A stretch of DNA of 64,000 nucleotides from Macrostomum hystrix. Taxonomy: Eukaryota; Animalia; Platyhelminthes. The stretch's first letter is position 1. The number at the start of each line of letters is the position of its first letter. Shown in pieces: positions 26,712 through 58,043 of this stretch. A program made the position numbers and the translations under genes. The DNA is taken from positions 9,920,001 through 9,984,000 of the forward strand of contig CATNEN010000007.1 in the NCBI GenBank assembly GCA_950097015.1. Reading direction: 5' to 3'. Below the pieces are notes generated by a model. That model saw only the letters and a program-made list of their open reading frames with translations. It was not told where the DNA came from and searched no databases.

Positions 26712-27326
26712 GCCAGGGCTCGAATCTCTCGTCTGTGCCATCGAGGCTCGACTAATAAGATTACGAGGCAGTTACACTCTAAGGTGGCAGGCATAGTTAA
26801 TCGTGCCGGTTATTTTCTTAAGTGCAACAATTACTAGAACTATTTTTTAACTATGCAGCACATGTACGAACTGTTTTTCTACTCTTGTGTGTGTATATTT
26901 TTCCCTAGCGACGAATTTACAAACAGCCACTGCTTGTTTCTTGAATTCCACGTTTTCGTACGAAAATTAACTGCTCCAATGTTTTCTCTGTAACGAGAAA
27001 GAAACTTTTTCAACCGCAACCCTACTGAAGTTTACTGTATACAATGCTTTTCCCGGTCGCAGTCTTTTTTTCCACTTTATTATAGTCGTTCGTTTTTAAC
27101 CTTCCAAGCTACGTTTGGCTTGAGCCGAAACTACGGCTGCGAATCAAGGATCAAAATATAACATTTAAAATGTATTTTTCCATCCGAATTTGCTTTACTA
27201 GCAAAGTCTATGAAGTTTACATGTCCAATTGTCCATACTACTGTTCAGATAGTAGCACGGTAGGAACATTTGCAGCGAACAAATGCCTTTAATACGGTCC
27301 AGCATTTTGTCTGACTCTGATTTCAG

Positions 27327-28520
27327 TTCGCAGCATCCGCATCTGTTTGTCGCTGGCTTCTGCGCCGCAGTCCCCGGATTGTTTTTGCCAGCAGCAGTTC
27401 GCCTTGCCTCGCCGTTTGCTTCTCCGCGCCTCGCGCCGGCCTGGCCAACATCCGGTCTGGCCGTCACCTGGAGCACGTGCTGTACCCGCAGCGCCTGCGG
27501 CCCAAGCGTCAGGACCAACAGAAGCTGCCGCGGGCGCCATCCAACCTGGTGACTCGCGAGGACCTCGAGGCCGCCTGGTCCTGGAAGGCCGAGGGCGGCG
27601 ACTCGGACGCTGCGGCTCAGCTCATCCTCAGCGTCGACTGCCGCGCCATGGACTCGGAGGATCTGGCGCTCAGTCTGCGCGCAGTTGCCTCTCCGTATCG
27701 GGCGCGCCACCTCGGCGCTGTCGGGGAGGCCAAGCTGGCTGTCCTGCGCGCAGATCCACGGCTGACGCTGCTGGAGTGCGCGGCCGCGGCGCGAGCTCGG
27801 CACCTCGGACCTTCGCAGCTGTGCCGCCTCGTCTGCGATGTCTGCGTGGCACTCCGCGCCGACCCGCGCATCTCCGCCGCTCTGCTGGCGCTGCTAAATT
27901 CGGCGGCGAACGACCTGCCGCTTGAGCGCCTGCTGGAGACGCTGTGGCGCCTCGAACGCGCGCCGCCACCCGGCCCCGAGCTGGCGCTTTTTCGGCGCCA
28001 GACGCTGACACACCTGCGCGCCCGCCTTCACGAGCTGGACGGCAGCCCAACGCCAAATTGCGCGGCCGCCTCTCGTGCGGCCCTCCTGTTCTCTGGCGAG
28101 CTGGAGCCGGGTGATTCAGCGCGGCTTCTGACGGCGGCGCGGCGTGGCGCGGCCCAGACCTCTGCCCTGGATCCCGCTCGCGTCGGCGACTCGGTCTTCG
28201 CCTGGCGACCCCTCCTGGCCTGGTCGCTGCCCCCGGCCTGCCGACACCTGAGCGAGTGCGCTGACGGAATGTTTGAGCTAGGCGCCGACGACCTTGACGG
28301 CCTGCTGTGCGCGCTGGAGGCCCTGCTGGGCGCCTTGGCTGAACCTCCGGCCAGCGATGAGCAGCCAATCGGCGAGCTGCTGGCCGACCTGTGCGAGCTG
28401 GGGCCGCGCGTGCTGGCCCGCCTGCCGGAGACGGCCCGGCCAGATGATTTGACCGCCAAGTTTCACGAGCTGCGTCGGCGACTGCTGCCGCTGAGCCTTG
28501 CGCCTCCCGAGCCGGTTTGA
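27327..28520 (+). CDS. Leu/Ala-rich alpha-helical protein, tentatively FASTK-family-like, with a putative mitochondrial presequence; no genomic ATG at the 5' end
   Basis: Frame is open from acceptor TTTCAG| (exon starts 27327; in-frame TGA at 27318) to TGA at 28520 with GC-rich coding bias. N-terminus FAASASVCRWLLRRSPRIVFASSSS is Arg/Ser-rich with no acidic residues. AATAAA at 28615. FASTK similarity is by eye. Confidence 0.65.
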   Translation, partial: FAASASVCRWLLRRSPRIVFASSSSPCLAVCFSAPRAGLANIRSGRHLEHVLYPQRLRPKRQDQQKLPRAPSNLVTREDLEAAWSWKAEGGDSDAAAQLILSVDCRAMDSEDLALSLRAVASPYRARHLGAVGEAKLAVLRADPRLTLLECAAAARARHLGPSQLCRLVCDVCVALRADPRISAALLALLNSAANDLPLERLLETLWRLERAPPPGPELALFRRQTLTHLRARLHELDGSPTPNCAAASRAALLFSGELEPGDSARLLTAARRGAAQTSALDPARVGDSVFAWRPLLAWSLPPACRHLSECADGMFELGADDLDGLLCALEALLGALAEPPASDEQPIGELLADLCELGPRVLARLPETARPDDLTAKFHELRRRLLPLSLAPPEPV

Positions 28521-29369
28521 AAGTGCTTCATATTTGTGTTTCTGCCCGCCTCAGGTCGGGTTTTGTGAGCTTGTCACATGCAGTCTTTCCTATTGCTTTA
28601 TATGACTGTTCGGAAATAAATAAATGAAAGCAAATACAGTGCTGTGCTGCAGTTCGATGCAGCCAAGGCCTGTGGCGTGCATCGTGCATTTACCTGCGCT
28701 GAAAAATTTACGGCTATTAATATGTCGTGTCTTCTTCATATCTTTTCTCTTCGGAATATCAATTTTTGTGATAGCTCCTAGGATTATCACCTAAGTCAAC
28801 ATCCCGTCCACCCCTCTGACTCCCGAGTCACTAGACTGTGAGGTACACGTTTTTGTGAAGATTTAACGTCCAATGCCTGCGTGGCTTAGAACAGCTATTT
28901 CTATTCATATGCGGCTGATTTTACCGCCTTGTTATTCGTCTAGTCTGTGCAATATTAACAGACGCCGAGCACAAGAATTAATCCCTAACCCTTACCTCTA
29001 TTCCCTACTCTCTGCCAGTTGCCCTTCATACTTTACCTCTAACTTTGAGGCTTGAGACACCTCAGCGTTTCAAATCTAACAGGACCAAAAACTGGACATC
29101 TCATCGATTAAAGATTCTAACAACCGATATTCGAATTCGTATTCCTTTCAATAGGACTGATCCTCACCTTGAGCTCCGGCTCCAGCCTTCGCAGACTCCA
29201 CCAAGATAAGTCCAATCTTATTCTTGTCTTCCAACAATATCCTTACTGTTTTAACATCTCTGTACGAAAAGAAATATAACATCCTAGTTGACGAGACTGA
29301 CATCTGGAAAACTGTCGATCAGGCTTCCTGTCTCCATCTTCGATTATACGAGAGATAGCCAGATTTCAA

Positions 29370-30038
29370 CTGCTCATCCCCCTGACACTCGAATCACTAG
29401 AATGCTCACCCCCCCTGACCCTCGAGTCACTAGATTGCTCATCCCCCTGACACCCGAGTCACTAGATTGCTCATCCCCCTGACACCCGAGTCACTAGATT
29501 GCTCATCCCCCTGACCCTCGAGTCACTAGATTGCTCATCCCCCTGACCCTCGAGTCACTAGATTGCTCATCCCCCTGAGCCTCGAGTCACTAGATTGCTC
29601 ATCCCCCTGAGCCTCGAGTCACTAGATTGCTCATCCCACTGACACCCGAGTCACTAGATTGCTCACCTCCCTGACACCCGAGTCACTAGATTGCTCATCC
29701 CCCTGAGCCCCGAGTCAATAGATTGCTCATCCCACTGACACCCGAGTCACTAGATTGCTCATCCCCCTGAGCCTCGAGTCACTAGATTGCTCATCCCCCT
29801 GAGCCTCGAGTCACTAGATTGCTCATCCCCCTGACCCTCGAGTCACTAGATTGCTCATCCCCCTGACCCTCGAGTCACTAGATTGCTCATCCCCCTGACC
29901 CTCGAGTCACTAGATTGCTCATCCCCCTGACACCCGAGTCGCTAGATTGCTCATCCCCCTGACCCTCGAGTCACTAGATTGCTCATCCCCCTGACACCCG
30001 AGTCGCTAGATTGCTCATCCCCCTGGGCCCCGAGTCAC
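29370..30038. repeat. Minisatellite, 32-bp unit (GATTGCTCATCCCCCTGACCCTCGAGTCACTA), ~21 copies
   Basis: Direct tandem units; a lone diverged unit lies near 28810-28836. Confidence 0.97.
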
Positions 30039-30144
30039 CAAGCTCGAGTTAGGACCAACTTAATAAGCACATAACTAACTGTAAACATTACAAAGCCAAG
30101 TTTTTCCTGCCTTTCAGTCACCAGACTAGCCTGAACATCTCACA

Positions 30145-30837
30145 ATGTCAGCTGAACCAATCATTGTTGAGCAGTCCAAGCCGCCACTGCCTGACAGCAT
30201 CCAGTCCAATGAGCAGCAGTCGCAGTCATTCTCACTGCGCCAGCTCACAGACAGTTTCGACCGATGCCGCGGCCAGCCAGATCTCGACCTCGCCGCCTAC
30301 GCTGAGGGCTACGATCAGCTGCTGCACTTTTTGCGCAGCCTGAACAAGGCGTTCTACTTCGTGGTGCAGGACGTGGACTCCAAGCTGCGCATCCTGCGCC
30401 TCCGCTTGTCCGGCCCTGAAGGCGCCAACTTCGCCAGCATTGGCGGCATGCTGCAGTTCGAGGCCGCCGCTAACTTCGCCGGCAAGGAGAACGGCTCGCG
30501 CACCCTGCTGCGCCTGCACCGGGCGCTCATCTTCCTGGTGCTGCTGCTGGAGCGCCTGGTCAGCGCCCCGCCTGACAGGGCCATCTCCGGCATTGCTGGC
30601 GAGTCCTACAACGAGTCCCTGGCCAAGCACCACCCGTGGGCCGTTCGCAAGGCGGTGGGCCTGGCCCTCTACCTGCTGCCATCGCGCGAGCACCTGCTAG
30701 CCAGCATGGCCGAGCAGAACGCCTGCTCGCCTGACGAGGTTCGCCGCCTGGTCATGGAGTCCGCGCCCTGCCTGCGCGACGTCTATGACCGGACCCAGCG
30801 GCTGTACGAGGAGGCCGGAGCTCTGGAACTGCCCTGA
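30145..30837 (+). CDS. CPTP: Ceramide-1-phosphate transfer protein (GLTP fold), single coding exon
   Basis: FVVQDVDSKLRIL, NGSRTLLRLHRAL (the RT.LRLHRAL signature of CPTP/GLTPD1 rather than GLTP) and YNESLAKHHPWAVRKAV; acceptor CCTTTCAG at 30117. Confidence 0.9.
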   Translation: MSAEPIIVEQSKPPLPDSIQSNEQQSQSFSLRQLTDSFDRCRGQPDLDLAAYAEGYDQLLHFLRSLNKAFYFVVQDVDSKLRILRLRLSGPEGANFASIGGMLQFEAAANFAGKENGSRTLLRLHRALIFLVLLLERLVSAPPDRAISGIAGESYNESLAKHHPWAVRKAVGLALYLLPSREHLLASMAEQNACSPDEVRRLVMESAPCLRDVYDRTQRLYEEAGALELP

Positions 30838-31600
30838 GCCGGCATTTCTAAATCAACAAAATGATAAACCCGGTTGAGATTGACTACTACTATGAGTAGA
30901 GCAGGCGAATGCAAAGGAAATTCAATTAATAACACATGCAATATAGGCAATTCTTGGAAGTTAATTCCTGATTCATAAATTTTCATTCAATTCCGGATTT
31001 ACATTGACCTGTGTCAAATTTTGTTTTATAATATTCCACCTCAATCTTTAAATTTCTTGTTTGGTCATGGAACAAGCATCAAATTTCAGATATAGCTCGT
31101 AATTACCTGTTCATCTTGAGCCACTTTATACTTTCGAATTCCTTACAACTTGCATCCAAACCCAGATAAATTTCTTTTATTGTCTTTCCGATCAAATCTT
31201 AGTTGTTTGGTTGTTCTTGTGGCATTTTGTATTTTGATTTTACCGGGTAATTTGCCGCATATGCTACTCGCGCTTTGTGCAGTAGCGCACCAGGCGCATG
31301 GTTAGTACTGTTTCCGATTGATATCTCGCCCGCCTCGTCTAGTTATGGATAGTAATCGCCCTCAGTATCGCCATAACTCGCCTAGTTGTCAAATTATCTC
31401 TGCCTCACCCACCCAGTTAAATGTGTCTGCATGACAGAAACTGTTACGAGTATACACCTTTAAAATTTTTTTGTGCTTCAAATTTAGTGTTTTAACTCGA
31501 TTGCTGCTTTAAAACACAATTTCTGCTCAATATGCCGAATAGGATCGATTAACTTGACTTCCATAGTCAGTTGTAGCTGTAGATAGCTGTAGTTGTAGTT

Positions 31601-31750
31601 GTAGTTGTATGGTTAGATTCATCGGACTCATGACTTGGAAGTCAGGGGTTCAGTTCACCCAGCTGTTAAAAGAGTACCCAGCATTAGCTGGGGTATTTGA
31701 GTGCAGGGTGTGGTTCCTTCCTGGTCCATGGACTGAGGAAGGGTTAGAGT
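31601..31750 (+). mobile_element. Possible tRNA-derived SINE remnant
   Basis: A-box-like GTTGTATGGTTAG, B-box-like GGGTTCAGTTC, then CACCCAGCTGTTAAAAGAGTACC, which resembles the downstream part of CORE-type SINEs; no intact cloverleaf. Confidence 0.35.
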
Positions 31751-31818
31751 TAGCGTAATTGCATAAATATGTTAGTCCAGAACCTGTGCAGACTCCGGGC
31801 TTGCCCTGCGCATTGCAG

Positions 31819-33501
31819 GCACGGCAGCCCGCGGCCAGCGATCCCTGGGCCAGCAGTTGCTTCGGCGAAGACGAGGAGCCGCCAACTGGCGCTGCCTCGC
31901 CAGACGCCGAGGACTACCTGCTACCAAGGCAGGAGGTCGAGCGGCTCTGCGACTGCCGGCTGGACCCGCCTCCCGACGCCACGTCAGCTGCGGCTACGGC
32001 GGCTTCGGCCGCTTCTTCGAAGTCGACAACTGCGGCTGCGCTGCGGCGTCGGCATCGTCAGCTGGTGCGCGCCGACTCGCTGGTTCTGCGCGACCCTCAG
32101 GCGCGGCACGCCGTCGACATGCTGGCGGCCGTGCGGCGCCTTCGACAACTGCAGCGTCGACAACTGAAGCGGCGCCGACAGAGGCTGCTGTTACAGGTGC
32201 TTTTAATTAGCTATCCTAGCTATCCCTAACCTGTTAGATATTTGGTGTCCTTCCTGTTAGACACTCCCTAGCCTGTTAGATATTTGGTATCCTTCCTGTT
32301 AGACACTCCCTAGCCTGTTAGATATTTGGTGTCCTTCCTGTTAGACACTCCCTAGCCTGTTAGATATTTAGTGTCTTTCCTGTTAGGCACTCCCTAGCCT
32401 GTTAGATATTTGGTGTCCTTCCTGTTAGACACTCCCTAGCCTGTTAGATATTTGGTGTCCTTCCTGTTAGGCACTCCCTAGCCTGTTAGATATTTGGTGT
32501 CCTTCCTGTTAGACACTCCCTAGCCTGTTAGATATTTGGTGTCCTTCCTGTTAGACACTCCCTAGCCTGTTAGATATTTGGTGTCCTTCCTGTTAGACAC
32601 TCCCTAGCCGGTTAGATATTTGGTGTCCTTCCTGTTAGACACTCCCTAGCCGGTTAGATATTTAGTGTCCTTCCTGTTAGACACTCCCTAGCCGGTTAGA
32701 TATTTAGTGTCCTTCCTGTTAGACACTCCCTAGCCTGTTAGATATTTGGTGTCCTTCCAGGCCCAGACGGGAGCCGCTGCGCCTCCGCCGTCGCCGCCGG
32801 CGATCTCCCCTGAAGAGGCTGCCCGCCTGCGCGAGCTTCTCGCGGTGCCGGCACACACAACGGATCCGCGCGTGCCTCTGCTGCTGGGCGCCACCTCTGC
32901 CGAGGACTGCCACCGGCTGCTCCTGTGCAGCTCGTCAGCCACCGTGCTTCTAGCGGGCTTTGACAATGTCTCAGATGCTGCGCTGCGTGCGCTGGCGCAC
33001 TCGCTGGACTTGTTCCTGACGCAGGTTGGTGCAGACTAACAATGCCCGTTCGCTTTGATTGCTGCGGAATGCTCTGAGATGTCACATTCTTGGGAATCAA
33101 ATGCTGAGCCAAGATGCTCTGAATTGAATGAATGAGATTTCAGTTTTCAGTTCTCAGATGAGATTTCGCATTCGTCAGACCTGTTATTTGAGATCCTCTC
33201 TGCTCCCCTTCAGCTGTGCCAGCGCATCGCCGACCAGCCCAGAGTCAGCGACTATCCCGATGGTCTGCACAAGGCGCTGGCCGACTTCGGCATCACGGAG
33301 CCCTCCCAGCTGCGCCGCTGCTACGACCGACTCTTCACCGGTGGCCGGCGGCGGGCGCAGGACCGTCTGGCAGCCCTGCTCGGCCAGCTCGCCCCGCAGG
33401 TGCCTCCCGCCTTCGTCTCCGGAACCACTGCCGCCCTACCGGCTGCTGTCGACGTGAAAGTCGAAGCCAATGTTGTGGAGGCGTCCGGCGCCGTGGAGTA
33501 G
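31819..33501 (+). CDS. SUPT7L: SAGA/STAGA subunit SUPT7L (STAF65-gamma; bromodomain-associated histone fold), 3 exons; no genomic ATG at the 5' end
   Basis: Exons 31819-32196, 32761-33024 and 33214-33501, all phase 0. YLLPR...DPP, HAVDMLAAVRRLRQL, CHRLLLCSSSATVLLAGFDNVSDAALRAL and YPDGLHKALADFGI align in order with SUPT7L motifs (DLLPR..DPP, HTIQLIQHNRRLRNL, CRQLL...AGFD, FPDVMEQVFHEVGI). Confidence 0.8.
32229..32758. repeat. Minisatellite, 42-bp unit, ~12.5 copies, filling SUPT7L intron 1
   Basis: CCTGTTAGATATTTGGTGTCCTTCCTGTTAGACACTCCCTAG tandem units; the last unit ends in the acceptor CCTTCCAG. Confidence 0.97.
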
Positions 33502-33633
33502 AGACGAGGATATTCGGGATGGCTGCTTTCACTCCCTCGGCGATTCCGTCATGAGAGCCATCGGAAACCGTTGCCTCTTAGTCGATTCTTTTGTACAGAC
33601 TGAACTCAAGTGAATGTGCTCTGCCATCCATTT

Positions 33634-34127
33634 CCACTCCTAGATCCCCAGTTCGGTGTCCACTCCCAGATCCCAGTTCGGTGTCCACTCCCAGATCCCA
33701 GCTCGGTGTCCACTCCCTGATCCCCAGTTCGGTGTCCACTCCCAGATCCCAGTTCGGTGTCCACTCCCAGATCCCCAGTTCGGTGTCCACTCCCAGATCC
33801 CAGTTCGGTGTCCACTCCCAGATCCCAGTTCGGTGTCCACTCCCAGATCCCAGTTCGGTGTCCACTCTCAGATCCCAGTTCGGTGTCCACTCCCAGATCC
33901 CAGTTCGGTGTCCACTCCCAGATCCCAGTTCGGTGTCCACTCCCAGATCCCAGTTCGGTGTCCACTCCCAGATCCCCAGTTCGTTGTCCACTCCCAGATC
34001 CCAGTTCGGTGTCCACTCCCAGATCCCCAGTTCGGTGTCCACTCCCAGATCCCCAGTTCGTTGTCCACTCCCAGATCCCAGTTCGGTGTCCACTCCCAGA
34101 CCCCCAGTTCGGTGTCCACTCCCAGAC
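33634..34127. repeat. Minisatellite, 22/23-bp unit (TCCACTCCCAGATCCC(C)AGTTCGGTG), ~21 copies
   Basis: Direct tandem units; explains the six-frame repetitive ORFs here. Confidence 0.97.
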
Positions 34128-34681
34128 CGTCAGTAGCCAGTTTAAATGTTCATTTTCAGCCTCTGCCATACTGAATCATAAGGTTAAATTCAATGGAAAT
34201 ATACCAACAGTTTAGAAAATCCAACCTATTGAGTTGGACAAAACGAATTGTTGAGTTGAGAGTTGTCTGTCATTCTGCACTTTTTAATTGGACTAATATA
34301 GTTCTCGCATGGCATGTGATGAGCTGACTAGATCAGCTTAGAAAATATTTAGTCATCATTCAATGCAGCAACCAGTGGGCAGCAGGAAACAAAACCTGAA
34401 CCAACCAGCTTTGGAAAGCAAACAAGACCAATCTGATGTGCGTCCTATAATTTTCTCATAAAAGCTCATGGCGAGTAACTCGAGTAATGGCGAGTAGCTG
34501 AGCAAGCCAGCGGGGCTGTGTCAACAATCAGGCCGATGCCAGTGAAGACAAATTTGCTTTTTAAGGTCTTTTTCGTAGGAGCGGGTTGATTTCTGGTTTA
34601 AAAAACCAAAGCCAAAAAGCCAATTTAAAAAACGCGCTGAGCTAAGGACCTAAACACAGGCGTTCTGTCTCTGTCCTGAGC

Positions 34682-38336: not shown

Positions 38337-38864
38337 AATTTTCTGTCTATTTTTTTCTTAGTGTTTGGTCTAAACGGGAGTCCCTAAGTCGAGTCCGTAG
38401 GCACTTTTGCTCGGCAACAGAACCAGGCACAGTGCTGATAGGTAGACAGGTTTTACCTTCTGTCACAGTGGAATTATTATCGTGAGACTTTGTCATTCTT
38501 TAGCTAGGGCGCGGGGCGCGACTGCAGATAATGCACTCTGCAGTTATTTCAGTTATTGCAGTTATTGCACTGCACTAAATGCGATTGTAGGAACGCCATG
38601 TAATGTGCAAATCAAAGCAAAAATTATAAGTATAGGCACAAAAAATAATCAATTGATTCTTCAGCAACAATTCGAATGTATTTTCACTTATCGCTGGCGA
38701 ACTATTAAATAAGTCGAGAGCCTAACCCTAACCCAATTGGGATAAATAAGATATTGCCGCTTAACTCGATCTGGCATCTAAACCTGGGACTCTACTGAAC
38801 TTTTTTGACTCATATTTGACCCATTACCAGTCGTTTTGATAGTTGACTCAACCTGATTATCAAG

Positions 38865-39260
38865 ACCCATCCTGACCTTTCATGACCTTTCATGACCCAT
38901 TCCGACCCATCCTGACCCGTCCTGACCAATGATGACCCTTCCTGACCCTTCCTGACCAATCCTGACCAATACTTACCCGTCCTGAACAATCCTGAACCGT
39001 CCTGACTCATCTTAACCCTTCCTGCTCAATCCTGACCCGTCTTGACCCATCCTGACCCGTCCTGACTCATCCTAACCCATCCTGACCCATCCTAACCCAT
39101 CCTGACCCATCAATCCTGACAGTCCTGACTATCCTGACTATCCTGACCAATCCTGAACCTTGCTGACCCATCAAGACCCATCCTGACTATCGTGACTCAA
39201 CCTTATCCTGATCCCCATTAAACAGTCCTGACAATAATGACCCCAATCGACCTGACTATC
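38865..39260. repeat. Degenerate 10-bp tandem repeat (CCTGACCCAT)
   Basis: Recurrent CCTGAC(C/T)N(A/G)T units. Confidence 0.85.
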
Positions 39261-41482: not shown

Positions 41483-41749
41483 CTCAGTTCATCAGCCAGG
41501 CGAAAGTTAAATCTATTCATAGCAAGCAGCCATAGAGGCATTTACCTAGCCTAGCGGTGGACAAACAGTGCCTCATCAGCGCAGGAGAGAAAGATGTAAA
41601 ATGTAAAATATTTTTTCTGATTTCTAAGACGGAAAAGGAAGCTCCGGATTTAGGGCATCTGAGTGCAGCATTTCTGGATTTCCAGGTTCAGGACTCAAAG
41701 ACTTTCTCAACCTGGGACCTCAAAATACGGGACTTCTAATTTGGGACTC

Positions 41750-42623
41750 ATGAACTTAGAGACTTCTAAATTCGAGACCTCCGCATTCTGGACTTCTGTT
41801 TGAGGGACTTCTAAATTCGAGACTTCCGCATTCTGGACTTCTGTTTGAGGGACTTCTAAATTCGAGACCTCCGCATTCTGGACTTCTGTTTGAGGGACTT
41901 CTAAATTCGAGACTTCCGCATTCTGGACTTCTGTTTGAGGGACTTCTAAATTCGAGACCTCCGCATTCTGGACTTCTGTTTGAGGGACTTCTAAATTCGA
42001 GACTTCCGCATTCTGGACTTCTGTTTGAGGGACTTCTAAATTCGAGACCTCCGCATTCTGGACTTCTGTTTGAGGGACTTCTAAATTCGAGACTTCCGCA
42101 TTCTGGACTTCTGTTTGAGGGACTTCTAAATTCGAGACCTCCGCATTCTGGACTTCTGTTTGAGGGACTTCTAAATTCGAGACTTCCGCATTCTGGACTT
42201 CTGTTTGAGGGACTTCTAAATTCGAGACCTCCGCATTCTGGACTTCTGTTTGAGGGACTTCTAAATTCGAGACTTCCGCATTCTGGACTTCTGTTTGAGG
42301 GACTTCTAAATTCGAGACCTCCGCATTCTGGACTTCTGTTTGAGGGACTTCTAAATTCGAGACCTCTGTAATCTGGACTTCTGTTTGAGGGACTTCTAAA
42401 TTCGAGACTTCCGCATTCTGGACTTCTGTTTGAGGGACTTCTAAATTCGAGACCTCCGCATTCTGGACTTCTGTTTGAGGGACTTCTAAATTCGAGACTT
42501 CCGCATTCTGGACTTCTGTTTGAGGGACTTCTAAATTCGAGACCTCTGTAATCTGGACTTCTGTTTGAGGGACTTCTAAATTCGAGACCTCTGTAATCTG
42601 GACTTCTGTTTGAGGGACTTCTG
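41750..42623. repeat. Minisatellite, 45-bp unit (three 15-bp subunits), ~19 copies with 90-bp higher-order alternation
   Basis: GACTTCTAAATTCGA-GAC(C/T)TCCGCATTCTG-GACTTCTGTTTGAGG units. Confidence 0.97.
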
Positions 42624-42855
42624 TATTTGATTTCGGGTTCTTGGTTCTTGTAAGGCTGACCATCTAAGCTCAGGACGGACCATAAAAAGTTCTTTGACGT
42701 TGCAGATCTTTTTGCTTTGCCAACTCATAAAAAACGAAAGGACTCATTCCGTGTAGGCATATGAGCACAGCTCAATGTCTGGCGCACATCTGCACTAATG
42801 TCTAACAAGCCCTGTCGCACCATAAGGGGCTGAGAATATCTCTTAGCCAAGGCCT

Positions 42856-50200: not shown

Positions 50201-53200
50201 AGATTACTTTCACCTGTCCCGGATGTGTGAAATGCCATGAAGCTGAGTTCAGGACTTTGCAGTCAGTGGTTTTTGAGGGGCTGTTGTCACGAATCAGGAG
50301 AGCAGTAATCAGGTGGGGGTAATCGTTTGGGCAGTAGTCAGGAGAGCAGTAGTCAGGTGAGGAGTAATCACGTGAGCAGTAATCAGGTGAGCAGTAATCA
50401 GGTGTGCAGTAATCAAGTGAGCAGTAATCAGGTGAGCAGTAATCAGGTGAGCAGTAATCAGGTGAGCAGTAATCAGTTGACCAGTAATCAGGAGAGCAGT
50501 AATCAGGAGAGCAGTAATCAGGTGAGCAGTAATCAGGATCAGTAGTCATGTGAGGAGTAATCAGGTGAGCAGTAATCAGGTGAGCAGTAATCAGGAGAGC
50601 AGTAATCAGGAGAGCAGTAATCAGGTGAGCAGTAATCAGGATCAGTAGTCATGTGAGGAGTAATCAGGTGAGCAGTAATCAGGTGAGCAGTAATCAGTTG
50701 ACCAGTAATCAGGAGAGCAGTAATCAGGAGAGCAGTAATCAGGTGACCAGTAATCAGGTGAGCAGTAATGAGGTCATGTTCGGCTGCTTTTGAGAAGTTC
50801 AATGAGAATCAAAAAACAAATTTCGAACACGCTTACTCCCGAGTGCCTAGCCTTAGTAGATGACCTCATCTGTCTCTTTTTCCGCGTTAATTTAAATGTT
50901 GACAAGTGCGTAACCAGTCCGGTGTAGAATGGTCACGTGATCCCGCTGAGCCAACCCGCTGCCTCTGACCCATCCTTTATCCGCCTCGCCGAATAAAAGT
51001 TCTGTCGCAATTCCGTTTAGGCCAAGGAGGCCGGCATCTCCACGCTGGTGATGTTGGACGACCAAGGCGGTGAGTCCGGAACCGCGATGCGAGTCGCAGA
51101 CACGCCGCAGTTCGAGTTTGCACTTTCCTCTGTTGTCCGTGCGCTTTGTAGACGTGTAGCCTTTAGTAGCATTCTCGCCTTCCTCTGTTCATTTAGCACT
51201 TTTCTCAAATTTATCGGCGAGTGATACCTTAATCAATGGGTTTTCCTCGCGTAAAAGCTGATCTTCTGATTGTTTTTAAACGTTTTCCTATTGTATGAAA
51301 TTTATTTTCAGCAAATCGCCTCTGATACTGTCATGAAATCGGCTAATCATGATTTTTCGCATTTATTTTTTAACTCGATGGACTTAAATTGCATTGAAAG
51401 TTGTGTTTCCTGAAATTGATTCGCTACTGAACATAGCTGAGCATGGTACTCAAATCCTGTTGAAAACTGCCAATTGCCTGCAGAGCAACTTGACCGCATC
51501 GAGGAGGGCATGGACCAAATCAACCAGGACATGAAGGACGCCGAAAAGAACCTGGACGACCTCAACAAATGCTGCGGCCTCTGCATCCTGCCCTGGAACA
51601 AGTGAGCTGCCTCGAGAATTCGATTCACCAGTATGAGCCGAGCTTTGAAGTCACTCTTAAAATTTGTCCTTTTCCAGGGCTGGAAAAGGCAAATTTGACA
51701 AGAACTTCAAGAAGGACGACGACGGAACCGTGAACACCGACGGACCCCGGGTGGTGCTGGGTGACAACGGCATGGGTCCGCAGGGCGGCTATGTTACCAG
51801 GTGCGTGAGAGTGTAGTGCTCCGCATAGAAGTGATTGAATGGCTGAATGTACATTGAGGAGAGTTACGAGATTGGGCTAAATGTATTCTTTAGGGAGAGA
51901 CGAGATTCGGCTGAATGTACATTGAAGTGAAGGACGTGATTGGGATAAATTACTCTTTGGGGAGAGAGACGAGATTCGGCTGAATGTACATTGAGGAGAG
52001 AGACGAGATTTGATTGAATGTACATTGAGGAGAGAGACGAGATTTGGCTGAATTTACATTGAGGAGAGGGACGAGATTCGGCTGAATGTACATTGAGGAG
52101 AGGGACGAGATTCGGCTGAATGTACATTGAGGAGAGGGACGAGATTCGGCTGAATGTACATTGAGGAGAGAGACGAGATTTGGTTGAATGTACATTGAGG
52201 AGAGAGACGAGATTTGGCTGAATTTACATGGAGGAGAGGGACGAGATTTGGCTTAATTTACATTGAGGAGAGGGACGAGATTCGGCTGAATGTGCGTTGA
52301 GGAGAGGGACGAGATTGGGCTAAATTTACTCTTTGGGGGAGAGAGACGAAATTCGGCTGAATGCACGTTGCAAGAGATAATAGAGATTGGGTTAAATATA
52401 CTCGTACATTTGAGGAGGAAGAACGAGATTGGGTCGAAAGTAGATTGGAGGAGAGTGGGGCGAAATTGGGCTGAATGTACGTTGCGTAGAATATTAGGAG
52501 TAAATGAAGAATATACTAGAGTCTCTATATTATATAAGTACGGGTCCGTACACTGGGAGGAAGTGGGTGGAACTTGCTATTTAAAGTGGAAATTCATCGC
52601 GGTGTCCATTTGATAATAAATCATTCCGCCTCGTTCCGCCAAATTAAACATTTGTATGTCAAAAATGCAGAATCACCAAGGACGCCCGCGAGGACGAGAT
52701 GGATAACAACATCCAGGAGGTCAGCAACATGGTGGGCAATCTGCGCAACATGGCCGTCGACATGGGCAGCGAGATTACTTCGCAGAACAGGCAGTTGGAC
52801 CGCATCAAGGAGAAGGTGGGTGCCCACCTTTCTCTTCGGAAGTATTTTTCATACATTTGTAGCTTTACTCGCATTAAAGTACATTAATGGGAGTATATGG
52901 GCAGTGTTTGTGTACTTTTTGGGCGCTTATTTGCTTTCACAAAATACTGACATTTATATCATATTCTGTAGATAATGATTTACTACTGTGCAAAGCCATG
53001 TAAAGACTTTCCACAAAAATTGTGCGTATGTCTTCGCAGTAAGAGACCGACTTTAGGCTTTAAAAGAGATAATAGGCCCTTTAAGCCGATACCAGTCAAC
53101 AATTAAAAAACCAAGAGATATGGAGGGTCTGAAGGGTAAAACGAGTGAAGACGGGCCAGAGGGAAAGATAAGGAGGGGGTGAGGAAAGACAGACGAACAG

Positions 53201-53406
53201 CGAGCCAACCATAGACGAGAAAACAGGCATGAAAGTCGCGACATATCAATGTACTTTTATGGTCGTTACGTACTTTTAAAGAGCACTTGCGAATTCGATG
53301 GAAGTCACGGAAATGGCTGACCTCATATCTGACCCGCCCGCAGGCCGAGTCCAACCAGTCGCGCATCGAAGGCGCCAACGAGCGAGCGAACAAGATGCTG
53401 AAGTGA
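47204..53406 (+). CDS. SNAP25: Synaptosomal-associated protein 25 (Qbc-SNARE), 7 coding exons
   Basis: Exons 47204-47290, 50116-50157, 51021-51069, 51484-51601, 51678-51800, 52671-52815 and 53344-53406. TDE|[13 protein letters not shown]|[14 protein letters not shown], palmitoylation cluster [25 protein letters not shown]; AATAAA at 53448. Confidence 0.97.
49383..49475 (+). CDS. SNAP25: Alternative first coding exon of SNAP-25 ([31 protein letters not shown])
   Basis: Own ATG, 31 codons, phase-0 GT donor at 49476 compatible with exon 50116; homologous to exon 1a ([18 protein letters not shown]). Confidence 0.7.
49485..49972. repeat. 15-bp tandem repeat (CGAGTGAAACAG(A/G/T)AG), ~32 copies, SNAP-25 intron
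   Basis: Direct tandem units starting ~10 bp after the exon 1b donor. Confidence 0.97.
50293..50771. repeat. 15-bp tandem repeat (AATCAGGTGAGCAGT), ~31 copies, SNAP-25 intron
   Basis: Direct tandem units. Confidence 0.96.
51841..52482. repeat. 36-bp minisatellite (GGCTGAATGTACATTGAGGAGAGGGACGAGATTC), ~17 copies, diverged at the edges, SNAP-25 intron
   Basis: Direct tandem units. Confidence 0.93.
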
Positions 53407-54596
53407 CCGCCCTCGCGCCCAGCACAAAGACCAACCGTTTATATGCTAATAAAATATTTTCTCTCAGCTTATTCTGCTAGTTCGAGGCGTAAAGTACACA
53501 GCGAAAGTTACAGAGACGGCGCAGATTGAGTCCGGGGGCAGCAGCCCACCCGCAGCTGGCCTTTGTTGGCCTCATTCCCTCCCAGACTGGCTGGCAGAGC
53601 TGTGTTTCATTTTTCTCCTGTTCCTATGCAAGCTGACTGGCTGCCTGCCTGCTGCTTTGACTGCATATTTATGTTCTACATGCTAACACATTATACAGAA
53701 GTGCACGCGGCTAGCTGGGGCCTCGCCCGATTCGCTCTATCTACAAACCGCTAATGTTTTTTATCTGTCTGGCCCCCCGCCACCCAGTTCCTCCCAGTTT
53801 TTTAACACCGCACGGCTTTGCATCGCGTCATCTCCGCAGCCTCATCGTGATCCACCGCCTCCATCGCACTGCACCAAATTTCACACACGCTTATATTCGA
53901 GTTTTATTCCAATTTTCTGTTACATTTTTGCGCTTTAGCGAGTGAAACTATATCTATCTCTTTTCTGTTTAATTTTCCTTTGCATACTATATATACTACT
54001 CATATAGGCGCCTACGAGTAGGCCGGACCGGGCATCGAATTCGTGCCCGGCCTCGCTCGTTGGATGGAGCAGATTTATATCTAAATCAATTTTAACTGAC
54101 CGAATCTAAATTGCTACTTTTGCCACCAGCCCATACCGAATAATCCCACATCCCAGCTCTTCATTAAACGACCGATCGCATAATAAAACTCATCGCCCAA
54201 AGCATCGCGGCACAAAGCGAACATTTACTTAAAACTAACCGCTGCCTCTCGGCTTTTTTCTTTACTTATCTTATTCGTTTTAGCATTCCTCGCAGGTGTT
54301 TTTCTATTGTTGCTACTGTTAGTAGGTTAGCTAGGCTTAGCATTTCTCTGACTGAGAAAATCTAGTTAAACAAGGCAGCTGGCATATCAGTGACGCGTCC
54401 GTGACAGCTGAGCCGCTCATCTATGAGCTCCGTGACATTGTTTATTGACTGCCCAGACTGTGACCTGGCCAGCTGTCACGGCCTGCTTGCCGATAAGCCT
54501 GTCTGGGCGTTCCCCAGGGGGGAAGGCCTGCCAAGCTAGGCTGAGGAGTGCATCAAAGTTCACAAACTAACTTGGAGGACACTTTCCTGATTCCCG

Positions 54597-55545
54597 ACTT
54601 ATCCTCATCCCATCCTTGACTATCTGCTCATCCTATCCTTGACTATCTGCTCATCCTATCCCTGACTATCTGCTCATCCTATCCTTGACTATCTGCTCAT
54701 CCCATCCTTGACTATCTGCTCATCCCATCCTTGACTATCTGCTCATCCTATCCCTGACTATCTGCTCATCCCATCCTTGACTATCTGCTCATCCTATCCC
54801 TGACTATCTGCTCATCCCATCCTTGACTATCTGCTCATCCTATCCCTGACTATCTGCTCATCCCATCCTTGACTATCTGCTCATCCCATCCTTGACTATC
54901 TGCTCATCCTATCCCTGACTATCTGCTCATCCCATCCTTGACTATCTGCTCATCCCATCCTTGACTATCTGCTCATCCCATCCTTGACTATCTGCTCATC
55001 CTATCCCTGACTATCTGCTCATCCTATCCTTGACTATCTGCTCATCCCATCCTTGACTATCTGCTCATCCTATCCCTGACTATCTGCTCATCCTATCCTT
55101 GACTATCTGCTCATCCTATCCTTGACTATCTGCTCATCCTATCCCTGACTATCTGCTCATCCCATCCCTGACTATCTGCTCATCCTATCCTTGACTATCT
55201 CCTCATCCCATCCTTGACTATCTGCTCATCCCATCCTTGACTATCTGCTCATTACATCCTTGACTATCTGCTCATCCTATCCCTGACTATCTGCTCATCC
55301 CATCCTTGACTATCTGCTCATCCTATCCCTGACTATCTGCTCATCCCATCCTTGACTATCTGCTCATCCTATCCTTGACTATCTGCTCATCCCATCCTTG
55401 ACTATCTGCTCATCCCATCCTTGACTATCTGCTCATCCCATCCTTGACTATCTGCTCATCCCATCCTTGACTATCTGCTCATCCTATCCCTGACTATCTG
55501 CTCATCCCATCCTTGACTATCTGCTCATCCCATCCTTGACTATCT
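54597..55545. repeat. 23-bp minisatellite (GACTATCTGCTCATCCYATCCYT), ~41 copies
   Basis: Direct tandem units. Confidence 0.97.
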
Positions 55546-55919
55546 TTCTCTTTCTCATCGTCAGGCCAGTGAGCACTCCGCTGTGCCTTGGAGGTTGGCC
55601 CTCAAGGGTGAAAAATTGCACAACAAGCTCCCAAGCCTTCTCTCCGCGGCTGTGCCCTAAATGATTGTGGCCTCGCCGAGTAATCGAGTTCATGGACCTT
55701 GGTGCGAGAGGCAAACGCGTTAGACCGCCCTACCACTCACTCCCTAATTCACTCATTCCGGTGTACATAAGGCTATTAACAGAGTTGTCTATGGTAGTCA
55801 GGAAGCTACAAAGTTAGAATAATGTAGACTAAAGTTATCTCAGTACTCAAAGGTGGTTATTGAGTTATTGAAAGCAACCGATAGCGAGAAGCAAATGAGC
55901 TCAGGCTAAATTTTCCCAG

Positions 55920-58043
55920 GCGCAGGAGGAGCCTCGGTTGTCGTCACCGGCGCAGCTCACGCAGCTGCAGCATCAGCAGCACCTGATACCGCAGGTTCTG
56001 CAGCCGCCAGCCGAACTGAGCCGCCAAGCTCACATCGGCTCGATGGCAGCCTATAGGGCCGCCTACGAGCGCTCAATGTCGGCACCTGACGACTTCTGGC
56101 GCGAGGTCGCCGATTCGCTGCTCGACTGGCGCCACCGGCCAGACGACTGGCGCCAGGCGCCGGTGACGCGCCAGAATTTGGACCTGCGCCGGGAGGGCGG
56201 TGTCCACTTCGACTGGTTCAGCGGATGGAGCCTCAACGCCTGCCACAATGCGCTGGACAGACACGTAGCCGCAGGTCACGGCGACCGGATCTGCCTGCAC
56301 TGGGAGGCCAACGAGCCTGACGCTGCTGGCTGCTCCGTCAGCTACGCCCAGATGCTGGCCCGGGTGCGCCGGCTGGCCCGCGTCCTGTCCGACGCCGGCG
56401 TCCGCCGCGGCGACCGGGTCGGCGTGTACATGGCCGGCGTGCCGGAGCAGGTGGAGGCGTTGCTCGCCTGCGCCCGCATCGGCGCCGTCCACGTCGTGGT
56501 GTTCGCCGGCTACGCGGCCGAGTCGCTGGCCGACCGACTGTTAGACGCCGGTGCGCGAGTTCTGCTCACCTGCGACTTCGCCTGGCGCGGCCATAGGCGC
56601 CTGGCGCTGAAACCGCTCGCCGACGCCGCCATGCGCACCTGCGCGGAGGCCGGCGCCGAGCTGAGCGCCTGCTTTGTGCTGCGCCGCGCGACTGACGAGC
56701 CCTGCTCGATGCTGGCCGGGCGCGATCGTCTATGGCCGGAGCAGCCGACTGAGCTCGCGCCAGAGGACCCTTGCCCGCCCGAGTGGCTGGACGCTGAGGA
56801 GCCGCTTTTCGCGCTGCACACCAGCGGCAGCACCGGGAAGCCGAAGGCGTTGCTGCATAGCACGGGCGGCTACCTGGTCTACGCCGCCTTCACCACCAGA
56901 CTGGCCTTCGACATGCGGGCCCCGGCGGTGCACTGGTGCACGGCGGACCTGGGCTGGATCACCGGCCACACCTACCTGGTCTACGGGCCCCTACTGCTGG
57001 GCGCCACCTGCGTCATGCTGGAGGGCCCGCCCTGCTGGCCGGACGCCGCCCGCTGCTGGCAAGTTGTCGACCGCTACCGGGTCGAGTCCTTCTACACGGC
57101 GCCGACACTGCTGCGCACCCTCATGCGCGCCGGCGACTCTCAGCTGGACGGCACCGACCGCAGCTCGCTGCGCGTCCTCGGCTCGGTTGGCGAGCCGATC
57201 AACCCGGAGGTCTGGCTTTGGCTGCACGACAAGGTCGGCGCCGGCCGCTGTCCGGTCGTTGACACCTACTGGCAGACTGAGACCGGCGGTCACGTGATCG
57301 CCCCGCTTCCCGGCGCCACCCCGACCAAGCCCGGGTCCGCCTGCCTGCCGCTACCAGGCGTCAGGCCGGTGCTGCTGGACCCGGACACCGGGCGCGAACT
57401 GGATGGCCCCGCCGAGGGTCACCTGGCGTTTGGGCCGCCTGCTTGGCCCGGCCTGGCCCGCGGCATCCTTGGCGACCGCGAGCGCTTCGAACGGACCTAC
57501 TTCTCAGCCTACCCTGGCTACTACTGCTGCGGCGACGGGGCCCGGCGTGATGCCGACGGCTATCTATGGATCACCGGCCGGGTTGACGACGCTATGAACG
57601 TCAGCGGCCACCTGCTGAGCTCCGCGCAGCTCGAGGCAGCCCTGCTGCGCCATCCGGCTCTGGTCGAGGCCGCCGTTGTCGGTCGGCCGCACAGCCTCAA
57701 AGGCGAGGCCGCTTGTGCCTTTCTGGTGCTGAAGTCGGACAGCGGCGAAGACAATTCGCTCAACGACAGCCTGCGGGTGAGTCTTCGTTCGCTGGTGCGC
57801 GAAGTAATCGGCCCGTTCGCCGTGCCTGACCACATTCTGCGCGTGGCCGCCCTGCCGAAGACCCGCTCCGGCAAGGTGATGCGCCGCCTTCTGCGGCTGC
57901 TGTCGATCGGGCGCGGCATCAACGAACTCGGCGACCTCAGCGCGCTTGCCGAGCCGCAGTGCCTGGGGCAGGTGCAGGCAGCTGTACTGGACGAGTTTGG
58001 ACCGCCAGGTGGAGGCAACAGCGCATTCTCTGCTGTCGACTGA
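55920..58043 (+). CDS. ACSS2: Acetyl-CoA synthetase (AMP-forming), ACSS2-like, single long exon; no genomic ATG at the 5' end
   Basis: LNACHNALDRH, ACARIGAVH, TSGSTGKPK, WCTADLGWITGHTY, GSVGEPINPE, DTYWQTETGG, GDGARRD, NVSGHLLS (ACSS2-type) and LPKTRSGK. Frame is open from acceptor TTTTCCCAG| (55920); in-frame TGA at 55896. Confidence 0.95.
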   Translation, partial: AQEEPRLSSPAQLTQLQHQQHLIPQVLQPPAELSRQAHIGSMAAYRAAYERSMSAPDDFWREVADSLLDWRHRPDDWRQAPVTRQNLDLRREGGVHFDWFSGWSLNACHNALDRHVAAGHGDRICLHWEANEPDAAGCSVSYAQMLARVRRLARVLSDAGVRRGDRVGVYMAGVPEQVEALLACARIGAVHVVVFAGYAAESLADRLLDAGARVLLTCDFAWRGHRRLALKPLADAAMRTCAEAGAELSACFVLRRATDEPCSMLAGRDRLWPEQPTELAPEDPCPPEWLDAEEPLFALHTSGSTGKPKALLHSTGGYLVYAAFTTRLAFDMRAPAVHWCTADLGWITGHTYLVYGPLLLGATCVMLEGPPCWPDAARCWQVVDRYRVESFYTAPTLLRTLMRAGDSQLDGTDRSSLRVLGSVGEPINPEVWLWLHDKVGAGRCPVVDTYWQTETGGHVIAPLPGATPTKPGSACLPLPGVRPVLLDPDTGRELDGPAEGHLAFGPPAWPGLARGILGDRERFERTYFSAYPGYYCCGDGARRDADGYLWITGRVDDAMNVSGHLLSSAQLEAALLRHPALVEAAVVGRPHSLKGEAACAFLVLKSDSGEDNSLNDSLRVSLRSLVREVIGPFAVPDHILRVAALPKTRSGKVMRRLLRLLSIGRGINELGDLSALAEPQCLGQVQAAVLDEFGPPGGGNSAFSAVD

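What the first reader, a model, noticed from the sequence alone, without database searches (positions are those of the whole stretch)
27318..55945. Three genes lack their own start codon: initiator AUG probably donated by the trans-spliced leader
Seen in sequence: three unrelated ORFs each have an in-frame stop, then a pyrimidine-rich YAG acceptor, then coding sequence starting in phase 0 with no ATG. FASTK-like: TGA 27318, TTTCAG|TTC 27327, first ATG 107 codons later. SUPT7L: TAA 31756, TTGCAG|GCA 31819, first ATG 100 codons later. ACSS2-like: TGA 55896, TTTTCCCAG|GCG 55920, first ATG 41 codons later. In each case functional-looking sequence lies upstream of the first ATG: a presequence-like stretch, the SUPT7L LLPR/DPP motifs, and the ACS AHI.S motif. 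Established: flatworm spliced leaders end in AUG, and in schistosomes this AUG can act as the initiator. Inference: these mRNAs become translatable only after SL trans-splicing (M-FAASA, M-ARQPA, M-AQEEP), making trans-splicing an obligatory on-switch. ATG-dependent gene finders would truncate all three. Caveat: the acceptors were chosen by eye.
Basis: partly seen in the sequence, partly recalled or inferred. Interest (0 to 1): 0.85.

Follow-up and report, generated by a model that had tools for sequence, protein, structure and literature searches.

The report
Start codons borrowed from spliced leader
In this Macrostomum flatworm, two genes with no start codon of their own are shown by assembled transcripts to receive the AUG that ends the trans-spliced leader; a third (an acetyl-CoA synthetase) very probably does too, and the mechanism has been known in flatworms since 2006.

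Summary
Each of the three reading frames is closed by an in-frame stop, resumes directly after a YAG acceptor, and has no ATG for 107, 100 and 41 codons.

- **Sites A (27327) and B (31819): shown at RNA level.** Transcript contigs from three public runs carry the tail of the Macrostomum spliced leader (...TTTATTGCATG) joined exactly at these positions. The mature mRNAs read AUG-UUC-GCA... and AUG-GCA-CGG....
- **Site C (55920): no transcript evidence.** The single read-laying run was already spent. The indirect evidence is good. Residues conserved in animal ACSS2 and in an own-genome paralogue lie upstream of the first ATG. Codon usage is coding in that frame. Every AG from 55905 to 56004 would keep the leader AUG in frame.
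- **Gene names.** "FASTK-like" and "SUPT7L" are only weakly supported.
- **"Obligatory on-switch".** This is a logical consequence for the full-length proteins, not evidence of regulation.

The mechanism is established (Cheng et al. 2006, as cited in PMC12582326 and PMC9851317). This scan has already confirmed it on other DNA of the same genome (POP5, ADCK1, SIRT6). These are therefore new members of a known kind, of modest interest.

The parts
26460..27179 (+). 3' end of the upstream gene (APEX1-type AP endonuclease). Its transcript contigs end at 27179, 147 nt before acceptor A.
   Evidence: Pfam Exo_endo_phos on 25482-26024 and 26319-26708. Contig records 9, 17 and 25. M. lignano cluster members are named APEX1.
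27318..27320 (+). In-frame TGA closing the frame of gene A, 2 codons before the acceptor.
27320..27326 (+). Trans-splice acceptor of gene A (atttcag). It fits the M. lignano trans-acceptor motif YTNCAG.
   Evidence: The leader tail lies directly before 27326 in runs X5 and X6. The motif is from PMC8629364.
27327..28520 (+). Coding sequence of gene A, from codon 2 to the stop (397 codons plus TGA, single exon). It has no ATG until 27648. The N-terminus looks like a mitochondrial presequence.
   Evidence: Contigs end at 28642, after an AATAAA at about 28617-28626.
30112..30117 (+). Trans-splice acceptor (ctttcag) of the GLTP gene. This is a natural control site.
   Evidence: The leader tail lies before 30117 in X4, X5 and X6.
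30118..31395 (+). GLTP mRNA. The leader AUG plus TCA CCA GAC TAG gives a 4-codon upstream ORF. The gene uses its own ATG at 30145 (ORF 30145-30837).
   Evidence: PF08718 GLTP, E = 9.6e-34.
31756..31758 (+). In-frame TAA closing the frame of gene B, 21 codons before the acceptor.
31812..31818 (+). Trans-splice acceptor of gene B (attgcag). It fits YTNCAG.
   Evidence: The leader tail lies before 31818 in X4 and X5.
31819..32196 (+). Exon 1 of gene B: 126 codons in phase 0, with no ATG until 32119. It contains the LLPR...DPPP stretch.
   Evidence: The donor is cag|gtgctt.
32761..33036 (+). Exon 2 of gene B, at least to 33036. Intron 1 (32197-32760) is filled by a 42-bp tandem array.
   Evidence: The 30 letters following 32197 in contig record 16 match 32762-32791 uniquely. 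Bromo_TP hit at E = 0.09. Array.
55896..55898 (+). In-frame TGA closing the frame of gene C, 8 codons before the proposed acceptor.
55911..55919 (+). Proposed acceptor of gene C (ttttcccag). No transcript evidence. It is a partial fit (YCNCAG) to the YTNCAG motif.
55920..58043 (+). Acetyl-CoA synthetase (ACSS2-type) coding sequence from the proposed codon 2 to the stop. It is a single exon with its first ATG at 56043.
   Evidence: Pfam ACAS_N, AMP-binding and AMP-binding_C. Best named hits are animal cytoplasmic ACS at 47-53% identity. Conserved P, A and H upstream of the first Met.

Best explanation
The window comes from a Macrostomum flatworm. Its spliced-leader RNA gene ends ...TTTATTGCATG|GTAAG, so every trans-spliced mRNA begins with a leader of about 43-45 nt whose last three bases are the only AUG in the leader.

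Gene A is a single-exon gene for an all-helical, probably mitochondrial protein. Gene B is a Bromo_TP/SUPT7L-like gene. Both have an unpaired 3' splice site immediately in front of codon 2 and no ATG of their own. The spliceosome joins the leader there, and the mature mRNAs read AUG-UUC-GCA... and AUG-GCA-CGG.... A scanning ribosome therefore meets the leader AUG first, in frame with the whole ORF, and makes the full-length protein. For gene A this includes an arginine-rich, acid-free presequence.

What is shown: the leader-exon junctions in transcripts. What is inferred: that translation starts at that AUG. The inference rests on the scanning model and on the schistosome precedent.

Gene C is an intronless ACSS2-type acetyl-CoA synthetase with the same anatomy, and it most likely works the same way. 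Its junction was not observed. Without the leader, the unspliced RNAs can only give proteins truncated at Met108, Met101 or Met42. Trans-splicing is therefore needed for the full-length products, but nothing indicates that it is used as a regulated switch.
For: **The leader and its gene**
- The leader RNA gene in the window's own genome ends in ATG followed by the GTAAG donor. It has a U-rich Sm-like site and a 3' hairpin.
- It is identical to the published M. lignano 35-nt SL (PMC8629364).
- It also matches the M. hystrix and M. cliftonense SLs (PMC10468722, supplementary Table S3).

**Transcript junctions**
- Contigs of runs X5 and X6 carry GCGAAGACTCAATTTATTGCAT in front of G27326.
- Contigs of X4 and X5 carry CTGCGAAGACTCAATTTATTGCAT in front of G31818.
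- The runs are RNA-derived. Contig record 16 skips intron 32197-32760 of gene B, and coverage follows the exons.

**Coding evidence**
- The ATG-less stretches are coding in the proposed frame.

**Gene A**
- Three M. lignano orthologues (72% identical) are deposited as 'partial', start without Met, and have their first Met at the position of Met108.
- With the leader Met, the first 49 residues hold 7 Arg and no Asp or Glu.

**Gene C**
- Alignments to solved ACS structures reach residues 25-38, upstream of Met42.
- An own-genome paralogue with its own ATG aligns from residue 19.
- Pro, Ala and His upstream of Met42 are invariant across animal ACSS2.
- All 13 AG dinucleotides from 55905 to 56004 are in frame 0, so any of them would keep the leader AUG in frame.

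**Precedent**
- Cheng et al. 2006 (J Biol Chem 281:733), as cited in PMC12582326 and PMC9851317.
Against: - There are no ribosome-profiling or N-terminal peptide data, so use of the leader AUG is inferred.
- The leader AUG has U at -3, and U at +4 in gene A. This is a weak context, so some ribosomes may scan past it.
- In run X4, one contig (record 10, 27184-28054) crosses acceptor A unspliced. Not all RNA in that sample is trans-spliced.
- For gene C no transcript was examined. Its acceptor fits the YTNCAG motif only partly.
- An earlier follow-up on this genome (s1-316733) found one look-alike case in which a tiny upstream exon supplied the ATG.
- All three supporting runs belong to one study.
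Confidence: 0.8

Rival explanations
1. Gene C is not trans-spliced. A small upstream cis-spliced exon carrying or ending in ATG is joined to the acceptor at 55920.
For: No transcript evidence exists for C. In-frame ATG-plus-GT candidates lie upstream, for example ctATG|gtagtc at 55791-55793, and others 3 kb away. An earlier follow-up on this genome found such a mini-exon in one look-alike case (s1-316733).
Against: Equally good or better ATG|GT candidates lie upstream of A and B, where the leader junction was nevertheless seen. Such candidates therefore carry no weight. The nearest one has a poor donor, with no G at +5. The 942 bp directly upstream (54604-55545) are a 23-bp satellite without ATG.
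Confidence: 0.15
2. The leader AUG is mostly skipped and the proteins start at the next in-frame AUG (27648, 32119, 56043). The upstream stretches would then be 5' UTR.
For: The leader AUG has a weak context (U at -3). No ATG in any frame lies between it and the next in-frame ATG, so leaky scanning would land there. The Pfam ACAS_N match of gene C begins just after Met42.
Against: The skipped stretches have coding codon usage in that frame. They are conserved as protein in M. lignano. They hold residues invariant in ACSS2. In gene A they carry the only presequence-like segment. A minor truncated isoform from leaky scanning is not excluded.
Confidence: 0.08
3. Trans-splicing of these genes is a regulated on-switch: the genes are transcribed but kept untranslatable until the leader is added.
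For: Unspliced RNA cannot encode the full-length proteins. One unspliced contig crosses acceptor A.
Against: No condition-dependent data exist. Unspliced precursor is expected for any operon-like transcript. A and B sit in a same-strand gene row with short spacers, the usual constitutive context of SL addition.
Confidence: 0.05

Closest known systems
Flatworm SL 3'-terminal AUG used as initiator methionine (Schistosoma mansoni; Cheng, Cohen, Ndegwa & Davis 2006, J Biol Chem 281:733, as cited in PMC12582326 and PMC9851317)
   Same: The leader ends in AUG. The acceptor sits directly before codon 2. The recipient ORF has no start codon of its own, and conserved N-terminal residues lie upstream of the first genomic ATG.
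   Different: The species is a free-living macrostomid and the genes are different. Here only the RNA junction is shown, not translation.
Macrostomum SL trans-splicing and operons (M. lignano, PMC8629364; M. hystrix and M. cliftonense, PMC10468722)
   Same: The same leader sequence, the same YTNCAG acceptor motif, and short same-strand intergenic distances. PMC10468722 already notes that the SL's final ATG is probably a translation start codon.
   Different: Neither paper, in the passages read here, lists genes that depend on the leader AUG. The three genes here are specific examples.
slORFs: ORFs created by start codons within spliced leaders (nematodes, Oikopleura, trypanosomes; slORFfinder, PMC9851317)
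   Same: The start codon is supplied in trans by the leader.
   Different: In those taxa the codons are mostly near-cognate NUG, and the ORFs are often alternative. Here a canonical AUG serves the main conserved ORF.
Earlier confirmed cases in this same genome from this scan (POP5 s1-316750, ADCK1 s1-300469, SIRT6 s1-339199, YARS2 and thimet peptidase s1-316733)
   Same: Identical anatomy and the same kind of transcript-contig evidence.
   Different: Other loci. Those are AI notes that I did not re-check.

Membership tests
SL-AUG-dependent (start-codon-less) trans-spliced flatworm genes | The organism's spliced leader ends in AUG directly before the GU donor. | tested here: met
   The SL RNA genes in the window's own genome read ...TTGCATG|GTAAG. 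This matches the published SLs.
SL-AUG-dependent (start-codon-less) trans-spliced flatworm genes | Transcripts show the leader joined at the acceptor, with its AUG in frame with the main ORF. | tested here: met
   Met for A (27327; X5, X6) and B (31819; X4, X5).
SL-AUG-dependent (start-codon-less) trans-spliced flatworm genes | No in-frame genomic ATG lies between the upstream stop and the conserved N-terminal coding sequence. | tested here: met
   Conservation upstream of the first ATG is shown (A; C).
SL-AUG-dependent (start-codon-less) trans-spliced flatworm genes | Translation actually initiates at the leader AUG. | not testable with these tools
   This needs ribosome profiling, N-terminal proteomics or reporter assays.
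FASTK / FASTKD family (gene A) | FAST_1, FAST_2 and RAP domains. | tested here: not met
   No Pfam hit even at E up to 10, for gene A or its M. lignano orthologue. The atlas gives only leads: RAP, FAST_1 and RESC6 clusters at 0.87-0.93. The AF2 model is all-helical but poor (pLDDT 50.6). Foldseek found no match at E <= 0.001; the weak rows are organellar helical-repeat RNA-binding proteins.
SUPT7L / Bromo_TP histone-fold proteins (gene B) | Bromo_TP (PF07524) histone-fold domain. | tested here: inconclusive
Exon 2 matches profile positions 4-45 of 77 at E = 0.09, below the gathering score. There was no PDB sequence hit. The atlas gave only a 0.80 lead to TAF.
Acetyl-CoA synthetase, ACSS2 type (gene C) | ACAS_N, AMP-binding and AMP-binding_C domains, with closest relatives among cytoplasmic animal ACS. 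| tested here: met
   Pfam E-values 1.1e-11, 1.9e-81 and 1.4e-23. Best hits are M. lignano acetate--CoA ligase (53%) and animal 'cytoplasmic-like' ACS (47-51%).

The most novel reading that the evidence does not exclude
The leader AUG may act as an evolutionary rescue device: gene copies that lack a start codon become expressible simply by acquiring an unpaired acceptor. Gene C is an intronless, divergent copy of an intron-containing ACSS2 paralogue that keeps its own ATG, so it could be a 5'-incomplete retrocopy rescued this way.

In addition, all three leaders are free of ATG in every frame up to the next in-frame ATG. This may be selected so that leaky scanning yields a second, N-terminally truncated isoform, for example gene A without its presequence.
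Probability: 0.1. Interest if true: 0.55.

Novelty: new member of a known kind. Interest (0 to 1): 0.25.

Why it matters
In practice, gene models in Macrostomum genomes that insist on a genomic ATG will truncate such genes, mark them 'partial', or fuse them to a neighbour. This has already happened to the M. lignano orthologue of gene A, and it can remove targeting peptides from predicted proteins. Biologically, these cases add to the evidence that a free-living, early-branching flatworm relies on the leader AUG for conserved housekeeping genes, as schistosomes do. This supports the view that the terminal AUG is an old, functional feature of flatworm leaders. It does not open a new question.

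Tried and rejected
**Transcript evidence for site C**
- The search for homologous proteins returned no Macrostomum hystrix transcript-derived protein. I tried the N-terminal region, a 200-aa piece and the whole protein.

**Cis mini-exon scan**
- I scanned for upstream exons of the form ATG, open frame, GT donor.
- Candidates of similar quality exist upstream of A and B, where the leader is proven. I rejected the scan as uninformative.

**Naming gene A**
- Pfam, atlas, AF2 and Foldseek give only 'all-helical, organellar RNA-binding-like' leads.
- FASTK membership is rejected as unproven.

**Naming gene B**
- PDB sequence searches of exons 1 and 2 found nothing.
- Joining the exons for a search was left out.

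**Other readings**
- Horizontal transfer of gene C was considered, because the fragment search returned mostly bacterial partial proteins. I rejected it: the full-length search puts M. lignano and animal ACSS2 on top.
- The supplementary files of PMC10468722 give the SL sequence but no per-site list.
Full report
**1. The observation**

I read the three sites directly and translated them.

| Site | In-frame stop | Acceptor ends | Codon 2 | First in-frame ATG |
|---|---|---|---|---|
| A | TGA 27318-27320 | atttcag, 27326 | TTC 27327 | 27648 (107 codons on) |
| B | TAA 31756-31758 | attgcag, 31818 | GCA 31819 | 32119 (100 codons on) |
| C | TGA 55896-55898 | ttttcccag, 55919 | GCG 55920 | 56043 (41 codons on) |

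- None of the three stretches holds an ATG in any frame.
- I trained a codon-usage log-odds score on other coding sequence of the window.
  - In the proposed frame it gives +21.5, +15.0 and +13.6.
  - In the other two frames it gives -11 to -38.
  - None of 1000 shuffles reached the observed values.
- G+C jumps at each junction.
- The ATG-less stretches are therefore coding sequence, not leaders.

**2. The organism and its leader**

- The window is C7:9920001-9984000 of a 220-Mb, 42-contig assembly.
- The assembly holds about 20 exact copies of a leader RNA gene that reads ...GCCGTAAAGACGGTCTCTTACTGCGAAGACTCAATTTATTGCATG|GTAAG. This is followed by a U-rich Sm-like site and a terminal hairpin.
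- The leader equals the published 35-nt M. lignano SL (PMC8629364).
- It also matches the 43-nt and 45-nt SLs assembled for M. hystrix and M. cliftonense (PMC10468722, supplementary Table S3).
- Earlier scan notes name the species M. hystrix. I did not verify the species beyond the genus. Gene A is 72% identical to its M. lignano orthologues.
- The terminal ATG is the only ATG in the leader.

**3. Transcript evidence**

The look-up of sequencing runs returned four runs of one 2020 study holding about half of the words of 26500-32400, plus three small-share runs of a second study. I laid X4, X5, X6 and X1 on 26460-32440.

The X4-X6 contigs are RNA-derived.
- They cover exons and UTRs.
- One of them (record 16) leaves the genome at 32197. 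Its next 30 letters match 32762-32791 uniquely, so intron 32197-32760 has been removed.

Leader junctions seen:
- **Site A:** contigs of X5 and X6 begin with GCGAAGACTCAATTTATTGCAT directly before G27326.
- **Site B:** contigs of X4 and X5 begin with CTGCGAAGACTCAATTTATTGCAT directly before G31818.

The last G of the leader coincides with the G of the genomic AG. The junctions are therefore ...GCATG|TTCGCA at 27327 and ...GCATG|GCACGG at 31819, exactly the acceptors chosen by eye, and both are in frame.

**A natural control site**
- A third leader junction, seen in all three runs, lies before 30117. It starts a separate mRNA (30118-31395) for a glycolipid-transfer protein (PF08718, E = 9.6e-34).
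- There the leader AUG is followed by TCA CCA GAC TAG, a 4-codon upstream ORF. The gene uses its own ATG at 30145.
- This shows that not every acceptor is built for the leader AUG.
- In X4, one contig (27184-28054) crosses acceptor A unspliced, as expected for precursor RNA.

**4. Gene A**

- It is a single-exon mRNA, 27327 to about 28642. The stop is at 28518-28520, an AATAAA lies near 28620, and the contigs end at 28642.
- With the leader Met, its first 49 residues hold seven Arg, many Ser and Ala, and no acidic residue. From established knowledge, this is the composition of a mitochondrial presequence.
- A search of 1.84 billion representatives found only two relatives, both from M. lignano.
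- The cluster holds three GenBank entries annotated 'partial'. They begin without Met at the positions of residues 2 or 9, and their first Met is at the position of Met108. The start-codon-less state is therefore shared by the sister species.
- An older UniProt model fuses APEX1 to this protein, so the APEX1 > gene A neighbourhood is conserved too.
- 'FASTK-like' is not established:
  - There was no Pfam hit even at E up to 10.
  - The atlas points to RAP, FAST_1 and RESC6 clusters at 0.87-0.93.
  - The AlphaFold model is all-helical but poor (pLDDT 50.6).
  - Foldseek gave nothing at E <= 0.001. The weak rows are organellar helical-repeat RNA-binding proteins.
- I call it a helical-repeat, probably mitochondrial protein.

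**5. Gene B**

- Exon 1 is 31819-32196 (126 codons, phase 0). Exon 2 starts at 32761.
- Exon 2 gives a sub-threshold Bromo_TP match (E = 0.09, profile positions 4-45 of 77). The domain seems to be cut by the next intron.
- PDB sequence searches of exons 1 and 2 found nothing.
- The LLPR...DPPP resemblance to human SUPT7L rests on memory and is only a lead.

**6. Gene C**

- It is a 707-codon single exon with ACAS_N, AMP-binding and AMP-binding_C domains.
- Its closest relatives are an M. lignano acetate--CoA ligase (53%) and animal cytoplasmic ACS (47-51%).
- I could not obtain transcript evidence:
  - The protein collections hold no transcript-derived protein of this species.
- The indirect evidence is consistent:
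  - Alignments to solved ACS structures run from residues 25-38, upstream of Met42, and pair the A-H-I of gene C with H-V or H-L in the structures.
  - A paralogue on contig C39 has its own ATG and introns. It aligns from residue 19 (QVLQPPAELSRQAHIGSM against QVFEPPTSIQSRAHVSSM).
  - In an alignment with mollusc, barnacle, fluke and fish ACSS2, the Pro, Ala and His upstream of Met42 are invariant.
  - All those proteins begin 14-25 residues before the PP motif. Gene C would begin 28 residues before it.
- The protein must therefore start upstream of Met42. The frame is closed at 55896, so the AUG must arrive by splicing.
- Every one of the 13 AG dinucleotides from 55905 to 56004 is in frame 0. 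Any acceptor choice in that stretch keeps the leader AUG in frame.
- The acceptor at 55919 has the best pyrimidine tract, but it fits the M. lignano trans-acceptor motif YTNCAG only partly. A, B and the GLTP site fit it fully.
- A cis mini-exon remains possible. An earlier follow-up on this genome met one (s1-316733). My scan for ATG-open-GT candidates found them as readily upstream of A and B, where the leader is proven, so it cannot decide.
- I put leader donation at gene C at about 0.7-0.75.

**7. Mechanism**

- **Shown:** the leader gene, and the junctions at A and B.
- **Inferred from the scanning model and the schistosome precedent:** the leader AUG, about 43 nt from the cap and the first AUG on the mRNA, initiates the full-length protein.
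- **Precedent:** Cheng et al. 2006, as summarised in PMC9851317. The SL AUG is in frame in 28% of trans-spliced S. mansoni transcripts, and more than 40 cDNAs need it.
- **Context:** the AUG context is weak (U at -3). The next ATG in any frame is the in-frame one, so a minor truncated isoform from leaky scanning is conceivable.
- **The 'on-switch':** it holds only in the trivial sense that unspliced RNA cannot encode the full protein. Nothing points to regulation.

**8. Context**

- APEX1 (ending at 27179), gene A, GLTP and gene B lie on one strand with gaps of 147, 1475 and 423 nt.
- The 1475-nt gap holds a 668-bp minisatellite.
- By the repeat-adjusted 1-kb criterion used for M. lignano (PMC8629364), this is a candidate four-gene operon.

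**9. Novelty**

- The mechanism is textbook for flatworms.
- PMC10468722 already remarks that the Macrostomum SL's final ATG is probably a start codon.
- This scan has already confirmed the same thing on other DNA of this genome: POP5, ADCK1, SIRT6, YARS2 and thimet peptidase.
- These are further members of a known kind.

Noticed in passing
window 25482-33036 (+): APEX1-type endonuclease, gene A, GLTP and gene B lie on one strand. The transcript-end to acceptor gaps are 147, 1475 (including a 668-bp minisatellite) and 423 nt. The three downstream genes are all SL trans-spliced, and one contig crosses acceptor A unspliced. This is a candidate four-gene operon by the M. lignano 1-kb criterion.
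   Followed up: partly
window 30118-30147: At the GLTP acceptor the leader AUG opens a 4-codon upstream ORF (AUG UCA CCA GAC UAG). It ends 15 nt before the gene's own ATG at 30145, which is in the same frame. It is a built-in contrast to sites A and B.
   Followed up: yes
window 55905-56004: All 13 AG dinucleotides in the first 100 nt of the ACS coding stretch fall on codon positions 2-3 (CAG and GAG codons). Trans-splicing at any of them would keep the leader AUG in frame. This may be just Gln-rich coding, or tolerance to sloppy acceptor choice.
   Followed up: partly
window 27327-27647, 31819-32118, 55920-56042: No ATG occurs in any frame in any of the three stretches, where about 2.8, 2.6 and 1.1 would be expected from composition (my rough estimate). 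In each gene the next ATG in any frame is the in-frame one. Leaky scanning would therefore give in-frame truncated proteins.
   Followed up: partly
L008 1447-1920 (-), L010; G000:C39:16186487-16187305: A second ACSS2-type gene on contig C39 has introns and its own ATG (MSTRDL...). It is the counterpart of the M. lignano protein A0A1I8JEN4. The window's gene C is intronless and only 35-44% identical to it over the N-terminal part, so it may be an old retrocopy.
   Followed up: partly
L013 (G000:C39:12667800-12668900); L002 (G000:C15:8228-11255): There are two leader RNA gene classes. The canonical one sits about 300 bp from a U1 snRNA gene in a repeat of about 11.6 kb. A variant leader (...GACTCTCTTTTTTGCATG|GTAAG) sits with a 5S rRNA gene in a 927-bp tandem array with about 90 or more copies. 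All four junctions seen here use the canonical leader. The scan had already noted this (s1-085025, s1-845277).
   Followed up: partly
window 26000-58500: Thirteen minisatellite rows were found in 32 kb, with periods of 10-51 bp and lengths up to 942 bp (two of the rows describe one array). One array fills intron 1 of gene B (32223-32758, 42-bp unit). Another lies between gene A and GLTP (29371-30038). A third lies just upstream of gene C (54604-55545, 23-bp unit).
   Followed up: no
window 41707-42663 (-): A 318-codon ATG ORF with a Pentapeptide_4 hit coincides with a 45-bp tandem array (41761-42622). It is probably a translated repeat, not a gene.
   Followed up: no
G000, for example C7:8556413, C7:8561401, C24:365104, C38:27887531: Dispersed copies of the leader's 3' part are followed by GC or other letters instead of the GT donor. 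They look like DNA relics of reverse-transcribed trans-spliced RNAs, as earlier scan notes describe for retrotransposon LTRs (s1-306094).
   Followed up: no
P0091 (UniProt A0A1I8FN49, M. lignano): An older M. lignano gene model fuses the APEX1 endonuclease to the gene A orthologue. This is an annotation artefact of the missing start codon and the short intergenic gap.
   Followed up: partly
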